NCBI GenBank assembly: GCA_964270895.1
Contig: OZ185435.1
DNA from: Podarcis filfolensis
Lineage: Eukaryota
Direction: 5' to 3' (one strand)
DNA: 64,000 nucleotides
The notes beneath the pieces were generated by a model, which saw only the letters and a list, made by a program, of their open reading frames with translations, searched no databases and was not told the DNA's origin. Shown here piece after piece: positions 28,150-41,347 of the stretch. How positions within the stretch are numbered: the first letter of the stretch is position 1; every line of letters starts with the position of its first letter. The position numbers were made by a program, and so were the translations under genes.

Positions 28150-28301
28150 NNNNNNNNNNNNNNNNNNNNNNNNNNNNNNNNNNNNNNNNNNNNNNNNNNN
28201 NNNNNNNNNNNNNNNNNNNNNNNNNNNNNNNNNNNNNNNNNNNNNNNNNNNNNNNNNNNNNNNNNNNNNNNNNNNNNNNNNNNNNNNNNNNNNNNNNNNN
28301 N
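28150..28301. other. Assembly gap (152 N)
   Basis: N run. Confidence 0.99.
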
Positions 28302-29155: not shown

Positions 29156-29303
29156 NNNNNNNNNNNNNNNNNNNNNNNNNNNNNNNNNNNNNNNNNNNNN
29201 NNNNNNNNNNNNNNNNNNNNNNNNNNNNNNNNNNNNNNNNNNNNNNNNNNNNNNNNNNNNNNNNNNNNNNNNNNNNNNNNNNNNNNNNNNNNNNNNNNNN
29301 NNN
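29156..29303. other. Assembly gap (148 N)
   Basis: N run. Confidence 0.99.
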
Positions 29304-29763: not shown

Positions 29764-32700
29764 CTGAAGCAGATTGGAACAACATTGCATTAATGAGTGC
29801 GCTCATAAAAAAAAGGCCCAAACGAGAATGAAAGTTAAAGCAAAGGGATCCCAAGATCCACAAGAGACTGCAAAAACAGATTCTTTGTCAAAGCACCTGG
29901 TGGATACAACATGGCTCCCATACCAAATACAGCCCACATAGCAAACCAAAGAGTTCAAAGAAAGCAAATGCTATTTCACAGCCACGACTACAGCATATAG
30001 ATTACAACTATGACTTAGCAGAGAAAAAGAAGCTCTAACAAAAATAAGACGCCGCTGAGACTTTTAAAAAACACCACCACGACAAAGCTGTGGTGAAGAA
30101 CGGCTCAGAACTGATACTGTGATTGGTCACAGTAAACAGTCATTTTCTAAGATTCACGGCTGTAGCTTCTAGCGGAACACAGAGGATAAACAAACCATCA
30201 TTTAGCACAGCAATACTTACTGTTATAGAATTGCTGAGCTGTTTGACTTTCTGTTCTAGCTGCTCCCTTTCCTGTTTTAAATCTGAACTCCATTTCAGTA
30301 ATTTCTGTTTTTCCTCTTCTTTTGCTGTGGAAGAGAGTATATCAATTGTATCAATTATGCCCTGCAGATGGGATCTCTCAGCTGCTTTTGCACAATGGAG
30401 AGCCAGTATTGGACCATACCTGAAGCTGCAGGTGCAGACATAAAGAGAGTCAGATGAAGCTGTCATATCCATTTCATTACTGGGGTTATCATGCAGTCAG
30501 CTCTTAATTTCCTTCTGAAAACAAACATCCTACTCCCTTCCTCAAAGTAACATTTTCCAAAGAAAAGAAAACCAAGCCAAGCTCTGTACCGTTTTCTTAC
30601 CTGCTTTGTATGCAATATATGAATGAACAATTGCTAAAGTTCCTGGCCACGGGATTGCTTCTTCTTTCTTTAGCATCTGAAAGAAAGGAGAAGGAACACT
30701 TGGCTGACATGTTCTACCTCTAGGAAAGATGACACATGCTAAAGGGTTTCTTTCACAACTATTAAAATCAATGCCATTCTCTTCTGAGGCCCTCCCCAGG
30801 CAATTAAACAACTTAAAATCCCCCTTTGTTCTACTCTTGGGTTGCTGCTAGTTCTGGTCCGGGACAAGAAGCCTGATGCTTTGTTGACATGTGATGGATG
30901 TGGGAGGCCAAAGGGACAGAGAAATGAACCAGACTATATCCACATATCAAAAGGAGGGAGAGGAAGACTGTGCTGCAGGGCTATCAAGTGCATGGGGATA
31001 ACACGTAACCTTTCAAGAACTAAATAAAAAACATAAATTTCATAAAATGGTAAGGAAGGGTAGCCTTGTTGCTTTAAAGTCTACATTAAAAAAACAAGAT
31101 GAAGGCAATTACATGATCATTTCTATGCTTGGTTGTTTCAGCAGGCAAGCATTCAGCCCCTAAAGAATTAATTAAAAAAAATAAAAATCCCTAAATGGAT
31201 AACAAAATAGTGAGGCACTGGTAGGAAGAAGGGGAATTGTGTTACTAATCACTAAAACATATGTGCCTGTAATATTCACAACCAGCTTATACACAGCACT
31301 TACAATAGTATGTCGAAATGGGGAGTGGGGAAGGAAATTCCAAGCAAACAAATACTGAGGTTTGAGTACTGGGGGAATTCTATAACAGAAGCATTATCCA
31401 GAAAAGATGCCTGATCCACAACTCAACACGCACCTCAAGCAAGTAAACATTGCATTTACTGCACACACAAAAACCTCCACAATAGTTTGGGAAGACCCTC
31501 AAGATTTAATAGCATGAAATACTCACACATCTGTGCTAAACCTCCCACAAGGGAAGCCTGTTTAATCACCATGTCAGCAATTTTGTACATTCCCTTGCAT
31601 CTACAAACATTTTCTGCTGATGAAATTTTAACAAGCTGAACAGGAATGAAGAGACAACATATCTGATCTTAAAACTTGCCAGTAGAGAGGATTGTGACTT
31701 CATGATTCACAAACTGCTGATCTAATTAGCTAAAGGAAAAACACTCTGATAGCAAAGAGCAGTCTCCGTGGAGAAAACTACATGTTACTTTGGCAAACAT
31801 GCATTTCCCACAAATGTGTTGGTTAACAGCAATGCAGGAGTAGCGGGGCATTTCCAGAAGAGAATTGGTGGGTGGGAGACGGGTGTTTAATCATGTGGTT
31901 ATTCATCACAAAACGTTCCTCCCCAGCTGGGCTTATTTTTGCTCTCAAAGCCAGCTATGGGGAAAGATTTAGCATCTATCTCATGCCTGCTAACTCTCAC
32001 CTGTAAAATGCCCTGTGTCCCTGCATTATCATGCAAACATTGCTTTTCCAGCATGTAGCTTTGTCCTAGACCTTAAAATACTGGACTTTCCAACACATGT
32101 ATTGTAGAATGAAGCTAACATTATATACCATATTTTTCGCTCTATAAGATGCACCAGACCACGACGCACCTAGTTTTTGGAGGAGGAAAACAAGAAAAAA
32201 AATATTCTGAATCTCAGAAGCCACAACAGCAAGATGGATCGCTGTGCAGTGAAAGCAGCAATCCCTCTTGCTGTTCTGGCTTCTGGGATAGCTGCGCAGC
32301 CTGCATTCGCTCCATAAGACGCACACACATTTCCCCTTACTTTTTAGGAGGGAAAAAGTGAGTCTTATAGAGCAAAAAATACGGTATCTTTTGTGGAAGC
32401 AGAAATATCGATAAAGATGCAAGTGGATCAAAGGGAATCTTCCCCGTAAGTCTTCGAGCTTTGCCATGGCAAATAAATGGCTGTTTAGTACCCTGAGATG
32501 TGGAACAGAAAAGCAAACGTTTGATGGCTTTGAATTTGTGAGGCCATTTCAGTTCAGGTCAGATATTGTCACCCTCTCAAAGTCTAAGCCATGTGCCCCA
32601 CCCATTTTGTCCAAAGCAGAGAACCATTGCAAGAGGCTTCCCTTTTTGTGTCAAACAATACCTGGTCTTGACATTTGGGACAGATCCACATGCCCTTGGG

Positions 32701-35700
32701 AATAGTTTTCAGAGGTGGGTCCAGACAGTCCAAGTGATACACACGTGAGCACGTGTCACACATCAGCAACTGCCCACTTTTCCTGCAAACACTGCAAAAA
32801 TCTTCATGGATATCACCCTATAAAATTAGAGGGGGGAAAGGGAACTTACAAACTTTGAAAACTAAATTCCAGTTCAAAGTAAAGTCCTAAGTGAATGAAA
32901 TCCCCAAAATAATATCCTTTTCATGAAACACAGAAAGAAAGCTACCAAAGGGTCCCTGACGATTAGATCCACTTTCTTCAGACAGAAAAGAACCACAAGG
33001 AATGTCAGGGGCCATGGCTTCTTCAAATGCCACCATGTCTACCCTAGTACAATTTCAAACTATAAAGCACAGATCACTTTTTTTAAAGTGCCACAATAGG
33101 TTCGGTTCTCCAGGAGGTGCAGAACTTGTCACCCACGTTTCACTTAATGTCTGCATGGAACTGCTGGGTGGGATTAGACAGCGTCTGAGAGTGTGCTGTC
33201 ATCACCATTCTGATGACACACAGCTCTTATGTCATCTTCTGCAGGTAGGCAGTGGATGTGCTCATTGGTGCCTGGTCATGATAATGGACTGGATGAGGAC
33301 CAATGACATGAGTCTTAATCCAGCCAAGATGGATTAGCAGGTGGATCTTCTGTCCAGGTGAATGTCATGCAATCTGCTCTCGACAGGGTGAGACTCATTC
33401 TGAAAGGTCCATAGACTGAGTGTCTTCCTGGATCCACTGCTGTCACTTGAGGGACAGGTGGCCCTGGTAGTGCAGAATGCTTTAGCTTCTGTTTTTTTGT
33501 TACAAAAAAGTTAAAAACCAAAAGATTGTAAGTCACTTGCAGTGTAAAAGATCCACTGGGATGAAAGAATTTGGATATGGCAGATCTCAATGGGTGCTCA
33601 GCCGGTGGATCTTAAGACGGTATAACTTACACTAGCATAAGTTCCCCCCAGAAGGGGGCATTCTGGAGATGTGGCAGAGCAAGGAGAGACTTACACCTCT
33701 TCCAAACACATTCTGGCTCAGTCAAGTGACCCAGCAGCCCAGCCAATGTAGCTGGCAAAGAGTGTCGTATTCCTTCTGAACTGAGTTTGGAATAGGGGTA
33801 ACTTTTGCCACTGTAACATGCCAGCATTATTTATGCTAGCTTTCTATAGTTAGGATTGCTCCATTAGAGACTTTTGTAGTAAGCAACTAATAATTTAAAT
33901 CCAACACTAGTAGCCTGATCCAACACTAGGAGCTCACTATACTGAGGTGCTTATTTTGTTTGGGGACAGAGTGCATAAATCAAATAGTGAATATGAATAT
34001 TCCAGTGCTGGAGAGGAGTGAGACTAACACATATACAAGGAATAAAAGCTGATATCATTAACCATGATGGATAAAAGAGATTTGCTGTGGTGGTTGCTGC
34101 TGCTACTGTATGTCTTTATTTTCAATGGCTATATGACCACACTGGATTGATAAGCCTCTAAGCAAATAAGCAAAATCTGCACAGCTATAGGGGCAGAAAA
34201 TTGTACCAATTGTGAGCAGTGAAGTCATGGCCATTTCTAGGTGCCTGTGACATCTGTACAGCCTCATTCCACGCAGCACGCCAAATCAAAACAAGAAAGC
34301 AAGGGGATGGGTTAGGCAGGTGGGGGCCAGAGATAAAATATAAAATTAATGCTTTCTATTGGCAAAAGAACTGTGGTCTACACGTTGGCAAAATGTGATA
34401 TCTGGGGAGCAGCACTGAGGAGAAAGCCTGCCTGGATTCTCTGCAAATATGAGTAAGATCTACATATTTATTGTGCAATAAAATTATTGTTTGCAAAAGG
34501 CTATGGAATATAGCCTTGGGCATGCTTAGCATGAGCATAAGCATAATTTCACCTGGGTGCTGCCTCTTAAGGTAGCTACAGTCTTTCCTAAGAAATGTGT
34601 CTCATGTGCCATTATCTTTTCAATATTTTGGAAGTAGAAGGCACTGGTTGCAAAATCAAGTTAATGCACCACTTTAAGCCTAATATAACTTTAACCTTGG
34701 TGCATCACTGCAATATCCAGTAATAGGTATACTTTTTCTGATTTATCTTATGTAAACTTGGCCTTTCGATAGAAGAGATGGAAAACCTTGACCAAACCAG
34801 ACTAACACAAAACACCATCCCCAGCTGTAAAATGTCAACAAAGGCCCCAGTACTAGTTTTAATAGCAAGAACATTTCAGTTTTGCATGACTCTTTGCATT
34901 ACTTTCCCTTCCTTATCTCTTCACTTTAGGATGCAAAATTCTTAGCAAAGCCATTTAGTTTCCTTTTCTCTCTTTCCTTCTGCTGTTACCATCTCATAGT
35001 TACTATTTTTATTTGTAGATCACTGTACAGAAATGCAGAAAGAGAAGAAGAGCTAAAAAGAACAGAAATAAGGTAACAGAAAATGGCTTAATACATGAAT
35101 TTCAATCAACTGAGGGCTGCTCTGGAAAATTGCTACATCCAAATCCCAATCTCTAAAGCTTTCTTCAAATTCAGAATATAGGGATAAAATTTGAAAGAAA
35201 TAAAAGTGTCACAGCCTCCTTAAAATATGTAATTCAATCTTCCATATCAAACTGAGCAGTGGTAGGATTTGAATTATGCCAGATGTTTTCTACTGCCTTA
35301 CATAGCATGCTAATGTGCCCATCTTTATTAAGAATACATATTAAATGATGCCAGAATACCAACCACGGGTGGGTGGGAGGATATTACCCACAAACATTAG
35401 CTGAGGCTTAAACTTTGACATTGAAAACCAAGCCTTCACACTTTCATGGAAACCTCTCTCTATTAATTCCTAAACTTACTGTGCTATCCTGACTTTGGCA
35501 TGTAAAGATGCTTTGATTTTGCAAGTTCTACATATCAAATGAGTGCTGGATTCCAATGTTCAAATTATGGGGGGAAGGGGGGAACTTAAGGAAAACCTCA
35601 CATTTTATCCCTCAACCCCCCACCCAGCTTTTAAGTCAGTCATACTCCACTCTGTAGCTTTCTACAGTGTAGTAGTAGTAGTAGTAGTAGCTAAGATGAG

Positions 35701-38700
35701 TTTCACAAAATATAAGGGGGTTGGATCCCCTGTGACTTGAGCATTGTTGGGTTCTAAAGTAGTTCAATCTATAATAATACAGGCAGTTTCATATTGTCCA
35801 CTCAACAGAGTTAAACTTTCATGTATCGTTATGACTACCCAAACTCAAAAGGCCTACTTTTTTCTTGTATTTTGTGACTGCATGGAGGACAAACACAACG
35901 AGGTTTCCCTAGAACAGGGGTGGGGAGCATGTAGCTCTCCAAATACTGCTGAACTAATTTACAAAATCCCCTGACCTCTGGCTGTGCTAGCCAAGACTAA
36001 TGAAAGTTTGAGTACAGCAACATCTGGAAGGCCACAGATCCCACATCCTAGCCCTAGAGCGCCTGTTGAAGTGGAGCTGAAACCTAATGAGCATCTTAAT
36101 CTGAGTAACTGATTATGACAATTACAAGATATTCAGAAGCTAACAAGATCAGAAAGTTCTACTCAGTTGTCTCTCTCCATTAATGGGCAGTACTCTGCAC
36201 TAGCAGAGGCTTCCATGAATGGAAGGGAAGCAGTTTTCATTATCTTCTGGGGGCCACCTGCCCCATCAACCTCCACAATCCTTTGGAGCAGACCAGGGAA
36301 GGTCTACGGACTGCAGAGAGATGGGGGGAAATCAGCAAACAATGCCTGCCCCCATTCCATTAAAGGAATCCTATATTGGATTAAAGAGTCTTTGGTGAGT
36401 GGAGGGACACAACTGAAAACAAACCTATTTACCAGAAATTCTCCAAAAAACACACACCACTGAAGTGAAATAGGAGGTGAATTTCTGGAGGAAGCAATAC
36501 ATTCATGTGATGTGTGTACATGTTTGGTGGATGGATATTTAACAAAACACTCTAGGCTTGAAGGCTGATGGCTAATCAGAATTACATCATTACCGAAAGC
36601 TCAGAACATTATGTAAAAATGTGCAACAAACATCAACTGGAACGACAATGAGCTCACTGTCCTAGTGCTTTATTTATAAAACAAATGTGCTTAAGAATCT
36701 AGCAACCTTTGTCAAACCTGTTATAAGTAGAATGTGTTCATGTGCATGTGTGCACGCCATGCTAAATCAGCAGGAAAGTCCTCTTTCTTTGGATCAATTT
36801 TTACTACTGCCTTCTGATAGTTTGGGAGATTTCATGAATAATACAATACCTAGAGAATGAATGACTATGGCTCTTAACACAGAACTTGCATCCTATAGGA
36901 ATGCTGCCTGTTGATTTTATCTTTTGCAATACCCAGCAGTGCAGAAAAGATACTGATGGTGTTCCTGATTTGGCTATTCTTGGCTGCTTCAACAATGAGG
37001 CTACAGATACAGTTATGTAAGTTAGAGCAATCCTCAAGCTGCATATTTCATGAATGAGATGCAGAGGCTCTTAGCTCAGCAGCATAAAAAACAGACTGGA
37101 GGAACATCTAGTGCAGCCCACTAGAACATAAAAGTTATGCAATCTGATTGTGTGTAAAATGTGTTCATTAGTTGGGTCTTACAACCATGGAGCTATTTAT
37201 TATGAGGAAACGAAGGTACAGAGAAGTGATGAGACTTGACCAAGGTTGTGAGTCCAGAATTTCCAATTCCAATCCAGCTATCATGAGAAGGGTGGATTTC
37301 CCTCCCTTCTGAGTAATAAAAAATTACCACCCACACTCTCCAAAAACAGACAGTGTTGCAGATCAAGCTATGGGTTAGATCAACTTTAATTCAGCAACAG
37401 CCTGTGCTAAACTGGCAGAATAGGCAACTGGGCTCACATACCAGGAGGATACTTTCACAGAAAAGAAAACTTTTCCCCAGATAGGTATGCAGAATCCATA
37501 AACGAGAAGCAACTGCCAGGTGTCAGTGAAGGCATTCACTCTGACTCCACTAAGGCTGTGTCCAACTATCTTGAGCAAGAATTTCTCCTTACTTTATTGA
37601 TTCAGTAATAATACGTAATTGTTCCTAAGGCTTCTGTGTGACAGGATCTGTTCTCCTCCTGCCACTAGATTGCCGAAATATATCACATATGCACTGTCTT
37701 TAATTCACTGCATCACTGTGCATCTGGGAAGGGCTTATAGAACTTTGAAATATTTCCCCTTCTAACTCTACAATTCTATGACTCTAGGATATGAACATTC
37801 TGGCATGTCCTGTGGATATCATATAGATATATATATATATATATACTACTCCAGAGTTTGGGTGGGGGGTGAATAGGTACAAGTAGAAGTGTAGGGGGCT
37901 GAAGAAGGGGGTCATATTATTGCAGTTTACCATAATACCAGTGCATCTAAAGAACCAAATTCTGAAGTCTCCACGGTCTCTTCAAACAGCAAACCTCTCA
38001 GGAAGAATTACTTACGTCTGTGGAGCTGGGGCTGGGCAGGGACACAGGATGAACAGTTGCGGGGAAAGAAAATGTGGTCTCTGTCTTTTCATTTTCAGGG
38101 GAGTCAGGATGACTGGACAGAGGGGATGTGGGGGTCAGAGCCCCAAACCCCAGCACCGTGTTGTATTTAGGTGGACGACCTACACATTAACAAAAGGGAA
38201 CAAAAAGGGGAGGGGAAATAATCTTACATACCTTTGGCCAGTGCTCCTCATTGGCTAGCATGAAAAAAAGGAAGTGATGTAGTACAGAGAAGAAGTTAGT
38301 ATTATAGTCACGAGTGAAAGAAAGCCAAGTCAGGACTGTAAAGTTATTTTTAAGACACTTAAAGGAGAATTGTGTAAGGAAGGATGGTATCACAAGAGAG
38401 AAAACACATGCCTTCAGAAAGAGCGCTACTCCCAATATATCTCTATAACCACACTAATGTCTTTAACTTTTAACTTACCACCCCCAAATTCCACTGGCAA
38501 AGAAAAGCTGCCATGATTTCTACCACTCTAATTTATCATGGTATCTCCATCACATTGTTATGACCATTGGTAAATCACCCTCAGTGAGCCTAAGGTGAAA
38601 CCTACATCTAAATACCACCTTTGTGCTAAGAAAAACTCACAACATTCCACAAATGCCAGAGAAAATTACGGCCTGCAACCCCATGAGATCTCTCTCAGCA

Positions 38701-39386: not shown

Positions 39387-41294
39387 TCAGGCACTATCAT
39401 TTTAAGCAAATTCAAATCAGTGGGCTAAACAGAAAGAGACAAATGCACTCTACTGAAACTGCTGAGCTACCTAATAACTCACCCAAACACTCATGTGCAT
39501 GAACACACTCATCCTACTAGGTACATAGTGCATATATCTTTTAACATTTGAAATATCAAGTATTATACAACTTATGTCCTCTGACCTGGCCATTTGTTTT
39601 TGAACAACAGGCCCAGGAGCAGAGGAAACATTAGAAAGCATTACAGAAAGGGCATTCAGTGCTCACCCATGATATTTAGCACTGAACAGAGTCAAAATAA
39701 ATTAATCTCAAAGCCAAGCTTAGTTCTACTGTGCAACTGGCTGGCTCTAAGAACACAGCAACCACCACACAAGAGCAGATCAGTAGTAACTTGTCTCAGA
39801 CACAAAGCAGACATGCTTGGTGATGTATTAGCAACAACAAGCATTGATAATATAGTACCTTTCTGATTCCTGGCCATCAACATACATTCTCTGGTGATCT
39901 TAGGGTCACCCAAAGCATTGGGAATTAACTTAACCTCTCTTGAACTCAACCATGTCGATAGCTGTCACAACCTACTGAAGCAGAGGGCTTCATCTCAAAA
40001 CTTCAAAAACTGTGCATCATCTGCTTCTTGGAGGCCAAACAACACTTAAAGGTTCAAGATGCAGGGAGAATGCAGAAACCTTCCCTCCTCAAGGAAAAGT
40101 GTTTCTGAGCAAACCTTCCACAGTTCACACCATCTCGTTTTCAACTGGGCTCTCTTTCCTTTAATACTAGATATATTGTTCACAGTGGAAGCAGCACAGT
40201 TTAGATCAAGGGATAAAATAGATATCCCAAGTTCTTTTCTTGTTCCATGGATTGGCTGCCCCATGCTCTGCTTTACCTGCCTTACAGTTTTACATGGACA
40301 ATTTCTAAAATACATCTCAGGACTGGCTTATATGCAGTTTGCCAGAGTTTTCCATTTGCAACATTACTCCTAACCCTTAACAGTTTACAGATACACACTA
40401 GGGCACATGAATAGATATGACCATGTTACTACTGCCTTTTTCGTTAGTATTTTAATCAATGTTTGCCTTTGCTGGCATGGATTAGTAACCTGTAAAGTGG
40501 GGGGGGGGAGTATGCAAATGGAAAACTAGTGAACTGCACGTGTAGCAGCCTAAACAAAGTCTGTACGTTAAAAACGGGGAAATGGCAGATTACTGGTGCC
40601 ATTCCACAAGCAAGATCAAGAATTCGGAACCTTGAAATCTAAGGAGAAAATTGGGTGGGAAGAATTTTGCAAGCATCCCTGTAATAATTTTAAGAGTACC
40701 ATGGTTGCCACACGATTTCATCAAAAATCAAGTAACTCGCCTTTCAAAGAAACCTGAACATGTTCTTAACAGCACAAGAAATAATTTCATTTCATAAACA
40801 GTGAGTCCTAACATAGGACCAAACTCACTTAGTCACTACAAGGGAAAAGTCTCAGAATGGGAGCTCAGTTACCACCTTGGCACCCCCCTTCTAGTCTGCA
40901 TGACGGGTTACATTTACTAATCTGGTAATCTGGGTTGGGAATCTTTACTGGCCCAAGACAGTTTACAAACAGGAAATTCTCCCATTTATATCCTTATTCA
41001 TTCCAGATTACCCCCAAAGCCTACCAACAAAGGATGCTTCTGTAGAGTAGCTGCCTACCAGGGTTACAGCATACCTATGATGTGTATTCAGTACCACAAA
41101 ACTATTTTCTATATTGTTATATTTCAGTCCAAAAGAAAGGGAAATAAACATACAAGGAGGTGCTATTATGAGACACCTACCTCGTTTACGTGTCCCAGGA
41201 TGCATTGTGCTGTTCAGGTATGTGACTGCGCTCTTCTTGCGCTTTACAGAAGAAAGGAAGAAAGTAGTCAACTGTTTTGGCAAGTGAAAGCTAC

Positions 41295-41347
<53 letters not shown>

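What the first reader, a model, noticed from the sequence alone, without database searches (positions are those of the whole stretch)
38016..38254. Mutually exclusive AT-hook exon / 23-nt microexon switch in PHF21A, intact in a reptile
Seen: the upstream exon ends ...TRKR+G (phase 1) and the PHD exon starts in phase 0. Either the 164-nt exon (completing the AT-hook RKR|GRPPK) or the 23-nt exon (ANEEHWPK) restores frame. Including both or neither shifts frame. The microexon destroys the GRP core and shortens the linker to the PHD finger by 47 aa. Established in mammals: neuron-specific PHF21A splicing that removes the AT-hook from the LSD1-CoREST complex. Its apparently identical peptide here implies amniote-wide conservation; I do not know whether it is annotated in squamates.
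Basis: partly seen in the sequence, partly recalled or inferred. Interest (0 to 1): 0.75.

Follow-up and report, generated by a model that had tools for sequence, protein, structure and literature searches.

The report
Lizard PHF21A neuronal microexon switch
The window carries an intact copy of a splicing switch already known in mammals and zebrafish: the chromatin-reader gene PHF21A uses either a 164-base exon that completes a DNA-binding AT-hook or a 23-base microexon that destroys it. Finding it in a reptile is expected rather than new.

Summary
PHF21A lies on the minus strand.

- **Frame logic.** A constitutive exon ends in phase 1 at 41181 (…TRKR+G). The PHD-finger exon starts in phase 0 at 32817. 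Either the 23-nt exon (38254-38232, ANEEHWPK) or the 164-nt exon (38179-38016, G|RPPKYN…) restores the frame. Using both or neither gives an early stop codon.
- **AT-hook.** Pfam's AT_hook model passes its cutoff on the 164-nt junction peptide and finds nothing on the microexon junction.
- **Conservation.** The microexon is 22/23 nt identical to the published mouse exon, with the same peptide. It is 23/23 identical to a second sauropsid contig and 22/23 to two bird contigs (ANEDHWPK). Sturgeon and paddlefish have annotated isoforms with an 8-residue counterpart (ANEDPLSK).
- **Prior literature.** Brain-specific, mutually exclusive use was published for mouse, human and zebrafish in 2015. The biochemistry followed in 2023-2025.
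- **Added here.** In all five amniote sequences the 49-69-nt spacer has no adenosine in its core. It therefore probably cannot be spliced out, which would enforce mutual exclusion. This is an inference, and an earlier scan note on the same stretch raised the idea.
- **Not tested.** Whether squamate annotations list the isoform was also not tested.

Verdict: real, ordinary, already known.

The parts
41181..41241 (-). Constitutive exon upstream of the switch. It encodes [20 protein letters not shown] plus the first base (G, 41181) of the split codon, and its donor is GAG|gtaggt. The basic RKR is the N-terminal flank of the AT-hook.
   Evidence: tblastn to P0039 residues 405-427; conserved in bird contig L003
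38295..38301 (-). TACTAAC, a perfect branch-point heptamer 42 nt upstream of the microexon acceptor. The other species have CACTAAC or TATTAAC at the same place. This is a candidate branch point only; it was not mapped.
38255..38294 (-). Pyrimidine tract of the microexon. It holds CU-rich (PTB-type) motifs, a UGC at 38260-38258 just before the AG, and the acceptor ...catgctag|.
   Evidence: PMC11864812 names UGC near the 3' splice site as the nSR100 (SRRM4) motif and lists the PHF21A microexon as nSR100-dependent and PTB-sensitive.
38232..38254 (-). 23-nt microexon (orthologue of E14-n). With the carried-over G it encodes ANEEHWPK and replaces the GRP core of the AT-hook by ANE.
   Evidence: 22/23 nt identical to mouse, 23/23 to L013, 22/23 to bird contigs L003 and L006.
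38180..38231 (-). 52-nt spacer between the two alternative exons: gtatgtaagat, then a pyrimidine-rich core without any A (positions 14-43), then ttaatgtgtag. It serves as the donor region of the microexon and as the pyrimidine tract and acceptor of the 164-nt exon.
   Evidence: The spacer is 49, 56, 64 and 69 nt in L013, two birds and mouse, and has the same A-free core in all of them.
38016..38179 (-). 164-nt canonical exon (orthologue of E14-c). It completes the AT-hook (RKR|GRPPKY) and adds a 47-residue-longer Pro/Ser/Thr-rich linker before the PHD finger.
   Evidence: Pfam AT_hook PF02178 scores 20.1 bits against a cutoff of 17.4 on the junction peptide. tblastn to P0039 residues 426-481.
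32662..32817 (-). PHD-finger exon, 156 nt, phase 0 at both ends, and the common acceptor for both alternatives.
   Evidence: (49/50 identical to PDB 2PUY, human PHF21A PHD)

Best explanation
This is the orthologue, in a lizard-type genome, of the PHF21A (BHC80) E14-n/E14-c mutually exclusive exon pair.

In most cells the phase-1 donor at 41181 is joined to the 164-nt exon. That gives ...TRKR-GRPPKY..., a complete AT-hook that binds DNA, followed by a 54-residue linker to the PHD finger that reads unmethylated H3K4.

In neurons the 23-nt microexon is chosen instead. It has a strong branch-point heptamer, a long pyrimidine tract and a UGC next to its AG. By analogy with mammals it is probably activated by SRRM4 (nSR100) and released from PTB repression. 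The protein then reads ...[20 protein letters not shown].... The GRP core is gone and the linker is 47 residues shorter. In mammals this weakens nucleosome binding of the LSD1-CoREST-PHF21A complex.

Exactly one of the two exons must be used, because using both or neither shifts the frame into an early stop codon. In addition, the spacer between them probably cannot be removed as an intron. It is only 52 nt long, and its core has no adenosine that could serve as a branch point at a workable distance from the microexon donor.

Shown here: the anatomy, the frames, the presence and loss of the AT-hook, and the deep conservation. Inferred: use in lizard neurons, the regulators, and the steric mechanism.
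For: Sequence, frames and stop codons. Gene identity: PHD exon 49/50 identical to the human PHF21A PHD structure, and colinear tblastn hits of full-length PHF21A P0039 across 57216-29593. AT-hook: Pfam PF02178 scores above its cutoff only on the canonical junction. Conservation: the mouse exon from the supplement of PMC4438066 is 22/23 identical and gives the same peptide. A second sauropsid contig, L013, is 23/23. Two bird contigs are 22/23, and their AT-hook exon is identical to pigeon and potoo PHF21A. All differences fall on one third-codon position. The roughly 130 nt of intron upstream of the microexon is among the few non-coding stretches that still align between the window and birds. 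Against L013, identity falls from 100% in the microexon and 88% in its immediate flanks to poorly alignable sequence further out. Sturgeon and paddlefish RefSeq isoforms carry an 8-residue ANEDPLSK in place of the AT-hook exon. Function in mammals: PMC11864812, PMC11605454. Brain-specific use in mouse, human and zebrafish: PMC4438066. Spacer: it is 49-69 nt long with no A between position 14 and the last ~9 nt in any of the five sequences.
Against: No RNA evidence from this species or its relatives was obtained. Inclusion of the microexon and its neural specificity in the lizard therefore rest on conservation alone. Branch points were not mapped. Sauropsids have a UUAAU whose A lies 8 nt from the 164-nt exon's acceptor. 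It lies 41-56 nt from the microexon donor, so steric exclusion is not proven, least of all for the 64-nt bird spacer. One bird contig has CGC instead of UGC next to the AG, so that motif is not strictly conserved.
Confidence: 0.85

Rival explanations
1. The 23-nt sequence is conserved but is no longer used as an exon in this lizard, or is used without neural specificity. PHF21A-c would then be the only or the main product everywhere.
For: No transcript evidence for this species was obtained. No squamate isoform with ANEEHWPK was seen among the 120 listed hits, although those were ranked against a sturgeon query and held no named squamate protein of either isoform.
Against: Both splice sites, the branch-point heptamer and the pyrimidine tract are intact. 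The exon is 23/23 identical to another sauropsid and 22/23 to mouse after about 320 million years, including synonymous sites. That fits continued selection on the exon itself.
Confidence: 0.06
2. The conserved block is mainly an intronic regulatory element of the 164-nt exon, for example its distal branch point and pyrimidine tract with a PTB platform. Its exon-like shape would be incidental in sauropsids.
For: The spacer and the upstream flank are as conserved as the microexon. The 164-nt exon lacks an obvious branch point of its own in the usual -18 to -40 range.
Against: In mouse the same 23 nt is a proven brain-specific exon (PMC11864812). The only substitutions are synonymous or Glu to Asp. 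Sturgeon and paddlefish annotations splice an 8-residue counterpart (ANEDPLSK) at the same position. The two roles are compatible rather than exclusive.
Confidence: 0.03
3. The microexon acts as a poison exon. Joint inclusion with the 164-nt exon, or retention of the spacer, would give a premature stop and lower PHF21A levels by nonsense-mediated decay instead of making a distinct protein.
For: Joint inclusion gives a stop 14 codons into the 164-nt exon. The retained 52-nt spacer carries an in-frame TAA, as seen in the spacer sequence.
Against: In mammals PHF21A-n is an abundant protein and the dominant form in neurons (PMC11864812). The spacer looks unspliceable. The encoded peptide is conserved.
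Confidence: 0.04

Closest known systems
Mammalian PHF21A-n / PHF21A-c (BHC80-4 / BHC80-6; exons E14-n and E14-c), PMC11864812, PMC11605454, PMC4438066
   Same: Same gene and same position between the RKR exon and the PHD exon. Same exon sizes (23 and 164 nt, a 141-nt difference) and same peptide ANEEHWPK. The microexon is 22/23 nt identical. The acceptor ...CATGCTAG| and the donor AAG|GTATGTAAGAT are the same, and the AT-hook GRP core is replaced by ANE in the same way.
   Different: The spacer is 52 nt here and 69 nt in mouse. The lizard AT-hook exon has several substitutions in the linker. Neuron-specific use, SRRM4/PTB control and loss of DNA binding are demonstrated only in mammals.
Sturgeon and paddlefish PHF21A-like isoforms with ANEDPLSK (e.g. 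P0044, Acipenser ruthenus isoform X3)
   Same: An 8-residue segment starting with ANE replaces the 55-56-residue AT-hook segment directly before GDIHEDFC. This shows the switch predates the split between ray-finned fishes and tetrapods.
   Different: The last five residues differ (DPLSK versus EHWPK). These are annotation models, and I did not inspect their genomic structure.
KDM1A (LSD1) neuronal 12-nt microexon E8a (Asp-Thr-Val-Lys)
   Same: It is a neuron-specific microexon in the partner subunit of the same complex. According to PMC11864812 it also weakens nucleosome engagement and depends on nSR100.
   Different: It is a simple cassette insertion, not a mutually exclusive pair. It lies in another gene that is not in this window.
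Alpha-tropomyosin exons 2/3 (classic sterically enforced mutually exclusive exons; from my own knowledge, not checked in a paper here)
   Same: Two adjacent alternative exons are separated by a short interval. The downstream exon has a long pyrimidine tract and a branch point too close to the upstream exon's donor for the interval to be spliced. PTB is involved.
   Different: No branch point has been mapped for PHF21A. Here one partner is a 23-nt microexon, and frame incompatibility gives a second safeguard.

Membership tests
PHF21A (BHC80) orthologue | PHD finger of the PHF21A type (H3K4me0 reader) | tested here: met
   49/50 identical to PDB 2PUY/2YQL 'PHD finger protein 21A', E = 3.6e-33. 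Pfam PHD, 51.6 bits.
PHF21A (BHC80) orthologue | Colinear exon series matching full-length PHF21A | tested here: met
   P0039 (sturgeon PHF21A-like, 670 aa) residues 52-648 hit the minus strand in order from 57216 to 29593.
AT-hook motif (Pfam PF02178) | Basic-flanked R-G-R-P core scoring above the Pfam gathering cutoff | tested here: met
   the canonical junction peptide scores 20.1 bits against a cutoff of 17.4 (residues TRKRGRPPKYN). The microexon junction peptide gives no hit.
PHF21A-n/-c mutually exclusive microexon switch | A 23-nt and a 164-nt exon side by side between a phase-1 donor and a phase-0 acceptor, where only one at a time keeps the frame | tested here: met
PHF21A-n/-c mutually exclusive microexon switch | Microexon sequence orthologous to the mammalian one (ANE replaces GRP) | tested here: met
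   22/23 nt identical to mouse and identical peptide ANEEHWPK; the paper states GRP versus ANE.
PHF21A-n/-c mutually exclusive microexon switch | Neuron- or brain-specific inclusion of the microexon | not testable with these tools
PHF21A-n/-c mutually exclusive microexon switch | SRRM4 (nSR100)-type UGC close to the microexon acceptor and CU-rich PTB-type tract | tested here: met
   UGC at -6 in the window, L003 and mouse (also seen in L013). L006 has UGC only at -28. CU-rich motifs lie at -33 to -40. This shows motif presence only; no binding or dependence was tested.
PHF21A-n/-c mutually exclusive microexon switch | Loss of DNA and nucleosome binding in the neuronal form | not testable with these tools
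   This needs EMSA or BLI as in PMC11864812. Here only the loss of the motif is shown.
Sterically enforced mutually exclusive exons (alpha-tropomyosin 2/3 type) | Distance from the upstream exon's donor to the downstream exon's branch point too short for spliceosome assembly | tested here: inconclusive
   spacer 52 nt (49-69 nt in other species), with adenosines only at positions 3-13 and in the last 9 nt. Candidate branch points are therefore at most 13 nt, or 41-56 nt, from the donor. No branch point was mapped.

The most novel reading that the evidence does not exclude
Mutual exclusion of the two PHF21A exons is enforced physically rather than only by reading frame and mRNA decay. An adenosine-free pyrimidine spacer has been conserved in design, though not in length, for more than 300 million years. 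It forces the 164-nt exon to use a branch point within about 13 nt of the microexon's donor, or one upstream of the microexon. Recognition of the microexon donor and use of the canonical exon's branch site would then exclude each other. I found no paper in the held library that describes this for PHF21A.
Probability: 0.45. Interest if true: 0.35.

Novelty: already known. Interest (0 to 1): 0.2.

Why it matters
PHF21A haploinsufficiency causes a human neurodevelopmental syndrome, and the neuronal isoform tunes how strongly the LSD1-CoREST demethylase complex grips nucleosomes. The same 23-nt exon, with its flanking signals, is preserved almost base for base in a lizard, birds and mouse, and sturgeons have a counterpart. 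This underlines that the switch is an old vertebrate feature under strong constraint, including at synonymous sites. For this genome the practical value is in annotation: gene models should carry both isoforms. The conserved A-free spacer is a small, testable lead on how the two exons are kept mutually exclusive.

Tried and rejected
1. **RNA evidence.** The look-up of sequencing runs listed coded runs. Organism D holds 0.99 of the words and is probably the source. One local tblastn in a script used the whole window file as its database, and nothing left the sandbox.
2. **Word search with the 80-residue neuronal junction peptide.** It returned only unspliced genomic ORF fragments of the PHD exon. 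These were useful solely as handles to fetch contigs.
3. **Word search with the 164-nt exon peptide.** No candidates, because of the length limits.
4. **Third word search.** Ranked against a sturgeon query, its 120 listed hits held no amniote neuronal isoform and no named squamate, so annotation status in squamates stays open.
5. **Paper searches.** Searches for the peptide string and for the run accessions of the fetched contigs found nothing. Irimia et al. 2014 (PMC4390143) is not held.
6. **Contigs that fell short.** L001, L002, L004, L005 and L007-L012 end before the microexon or lack it within reach.
7. **Frame logic as evidence.** Rejected as sufficient on its own, because there are 561 chance candidates.
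8. **Spacer as retained coding sequence.** Considered and dropped. The frame through the spacer is not conserved: spacers of 49, 52, 64 and 73 nt keep the frame, those of 56 and 69 nt do not, and the window's spacer has an in-frame TAA.
9. **Mammal-type ORF fragments.** P0034-P0038 are of unknown species and could be human, so I read them only as proteins and fetched no contig for them. Human PHF21A entries appeared in the hit table and were not pursued.

Full report
**Observation.**
Reading the minus strand confirms every coordinate of the finding.
- The exon 41241-41181 encodes [20 protein letters not shown] and ends with one extra G before the donor GAG|gtaggt.
- A 23-nt segment lies at 38254-38232. 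A long pyrimidine tract ending ...catgctag precedes it and gtatgt follows it.
- After a 52-nt spacer comes a 164-nt exon at 38179-38016, with acceptor tgtgtag| and donor GAC|gtaagt.
- The next exon starts at 32817 in phase 0 with [11 protein letters not shown]....

Splicing in silico gives four outcomes.
- With the microexon, the protein reads ...[20 protein letters not shown]....
- With the 164-nt exon, it reads ...TRKR-GRPPKYN...[12 protein letters not shown]....
- With both exons, a stop codon appears 14 codons into the 164-nt exon.
- With neither exon, a stop appears almost at once.
The two productive forms differ by 141 nt, or 47 residues.

**Is it more than chance?**
The frame argument alone is not. 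The 8363-nt interval between the two constitutive splice sites holds 561 open AG...GT segments that would restore the frame. Of these, 223 are 30 nt or shorter and 24 are exactly 23 nt. The case rests on conservation, described below.

**Gene identity.**
- The PHD exon is 49/50 identical to the solved human PHF21A PHD finger (PDB 2PUY, E = 3.6e-33) and hits Pfam PHD.
- A full-length PHF21A-like protein (P0039, sturgeon, 670 aa) was found with the 164-nt exon as query. It aligns colinearly from residue 52 to 648 along the minus strand, from 57216 down to 29593. The window therefore holds most of the gene.
- Two masked N runs (28150-28301 and 29156-29303) lie in the conserved last exon / 3'UTR region and were left alone.
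- Earlier unchecked notes of this scan call this genome a lizard of the wall-lizard type. I did not verify the taxon.
- In the window, the linker of the AT-hook exon differs from both the turtle and the bird proteins. It is closest to the unnamed contig L013.

**AT-hook.**
The canonical junction peptide scores 20.1 bits on Pfam AT_hook (PF02178, cutoff 17.4) over TRKRGRPPKYN. The microexon junction peptide gives no hit. In this genome too, the motif is assembled across the splice junction and is destroyed by the microexon.

**What is already known.**
- PMC11864812 (Cell Reports 2025; preprint 10.1101/2023.10.20.563357) describes PHF21A-c and the neuron-specific PHF21A-n. It shows that the microexon disrupts an AT-hook, that mutating GRP to the neuronal ANE abolishes nucleosome binding, and that the alternative exons are identical in mouse and human. 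It also lists the microexon among nSR100-dependent, PTB-sensitive exons with UGC motifs upstream.
- PMC11605454 calls the pair 'mutually exclusive exons, E14-n or E14-c'.
- PMC4438066 (PLoS One 2015) reported PHF21A among nine switch-like brain-specific events shared by human, mouse and zebrafish.
[quoted passage not shown] It gives a long-form inclusion of 8.4 in brain against 95.6 and 91.1 in two other columns, which I read as other tissues.

**Comparison across species.**
- *Mouse.* The microexon from that table differs from the window's at one synonymous base (GAA versus GAG) and encodes the same ANEEHWPK.
- *Birds.* Two contigs reach far enough upstream, L003 and L006. Both carry the same 23-nt exon with one change (GAC, giving ANEDHWPK), the same donor, and spacers of 56 and 64 nt. 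Their AT-hook exon is identical to pigeon and potoo PHF21A, so they are birds.
- *A second sauropsid.* A further contig, L013, was found through an ORF that reads [10 protein letters not shown]... through the spacer (P0033). Its microexon is 23/23 identical to the window's and its spacer is 49 nt. Its AT exon is 95% identical, while the more distant intron is barely alignable.
- *Intron flanks.* Between the window and the bird contigs, only exons and the ~130 nt upstream of the microexon align at all.
- *Sequence variation.* All variation in the 23 nt across five amniote sequences sits on one third-codon position, so synonymous sites are constrained as well.
- *Ray-finned fishes.* RefSeq isoforms of sturgeon and paddlefish carry an 8-residue ANEDPLSK in place of the AT-hook segment.
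- *Conclusion.* The switch is at least as old as bony vertebrates. A lizard copy is what phylogenetic bracketing predicts.

**Mechanism.**
- *Shown.* The two exons are frame-incompatible together and indispensable singly. The microexon has strong signals. They are a perfect TACTAAC 42 nt upstream of its acceptor (CACTAAC or TATTAAC in the others), a long CU-rich tract, and a UGC next to the AG.
- *Inferred from the mammalian work.* SRRM4 activates the microexon in neurons and PTB represses it elsewhere. The product binds nucleosomes more weakly.
- *Added here, as inference.* In all five sequences the spacer is 49-69 nt long. It has adenosines only within its first 13 nt and its last 9 nt, and no AG after the donor's GTAAG. 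A branch point for the 164-nt exon must therefore lie in one of three places. It could lie within 13 nt of the microexon donor, upstream of the microexon, or (in sauropsids only) 8 nt from the acceptor. The third option is unusually close to the acceptor and is 41-56 nt from the donor. In each case the spacer itself would be hard or impossible to excise, which would enforce mutual exclusion physically.
- *Status of this idea.* An earlier scan note on the same stretch (s1-335306) proposed steric enforcement by the 52-nt spacer. My comparison supports the design but shows that the length itself varies, and no branch point has been mapped. I found no paper in the held library that discusses this for PHF21A.

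**What could not be done.**
- The decisive test is junction reads in neural versus other tissue.
- Whether squamate annotations already list the neuronal isoform also stays open. The last word search listed only its best 120 of 2531 hits, none of them a named squamate.

**Verdict.**
The feature is the known, deeply conserved PHF21A neuronal microexon switch. It is of low novelty, with a modest mechanistic lead in the A-free spacer.

Noticed in passing
window 41298-41345 (minus strand): A (TG)n microsatellite of about 24 units lies roughly 60-100 nt upstream of the acceptor of the constitutive exon 41241-41181. GU repeats near splice sites can bind TDP-43-type factors. Its conservation was not examined.
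   Followed up: no
window 28150-28301 and 29156-29303: Two masked N runs fall inside the block that aligns with bird contigs as the last PHF21A exon / 3'UTR (29771 down to about 28086).
   Followed up: no
window 32662-32817; proteins P0093, P0136, P0043: Turtle and sturgeon RefSeq isoforms join the AT-hook exon (or the microexon) directly to [18 protein letters not shown]..., skipping the PHD exon. The lizard PHD exon is 156 nt and phase 0 at both ends, so the same PHD-less, in-frame isoform is possible here.
   Followed up: partly
window 31502-31767: This intronic block between the PHD exon and the next exon aligns weakly (66-70% identity) with several bird contigs. It has no tblastn match to PHF21A protein. 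It may be a conserved non-coding element or an unannotated alternative exon.
   Followed up: no
L013 941-1423; proteins P0033, P0034: In some species the ATG inside the microexon acceptor (cATGctag) opens a frame that runs through the microexon, spacer and AT-hook exon. Prokaryote-style gene callers therefore emit ORFs starting [10 protein letters not shown]. These fragments are a handy handle for finding the locus in unannotated assemblies.
   Followed up: yes
window 41181: The last base of the upstream exon (the G of the split codon) corresponds to the position of the human disease variant c.1285G>A. According to the preprint 10.1101/2023.10.20.563357, that variant lowers both isoforms.
   Followed up: no
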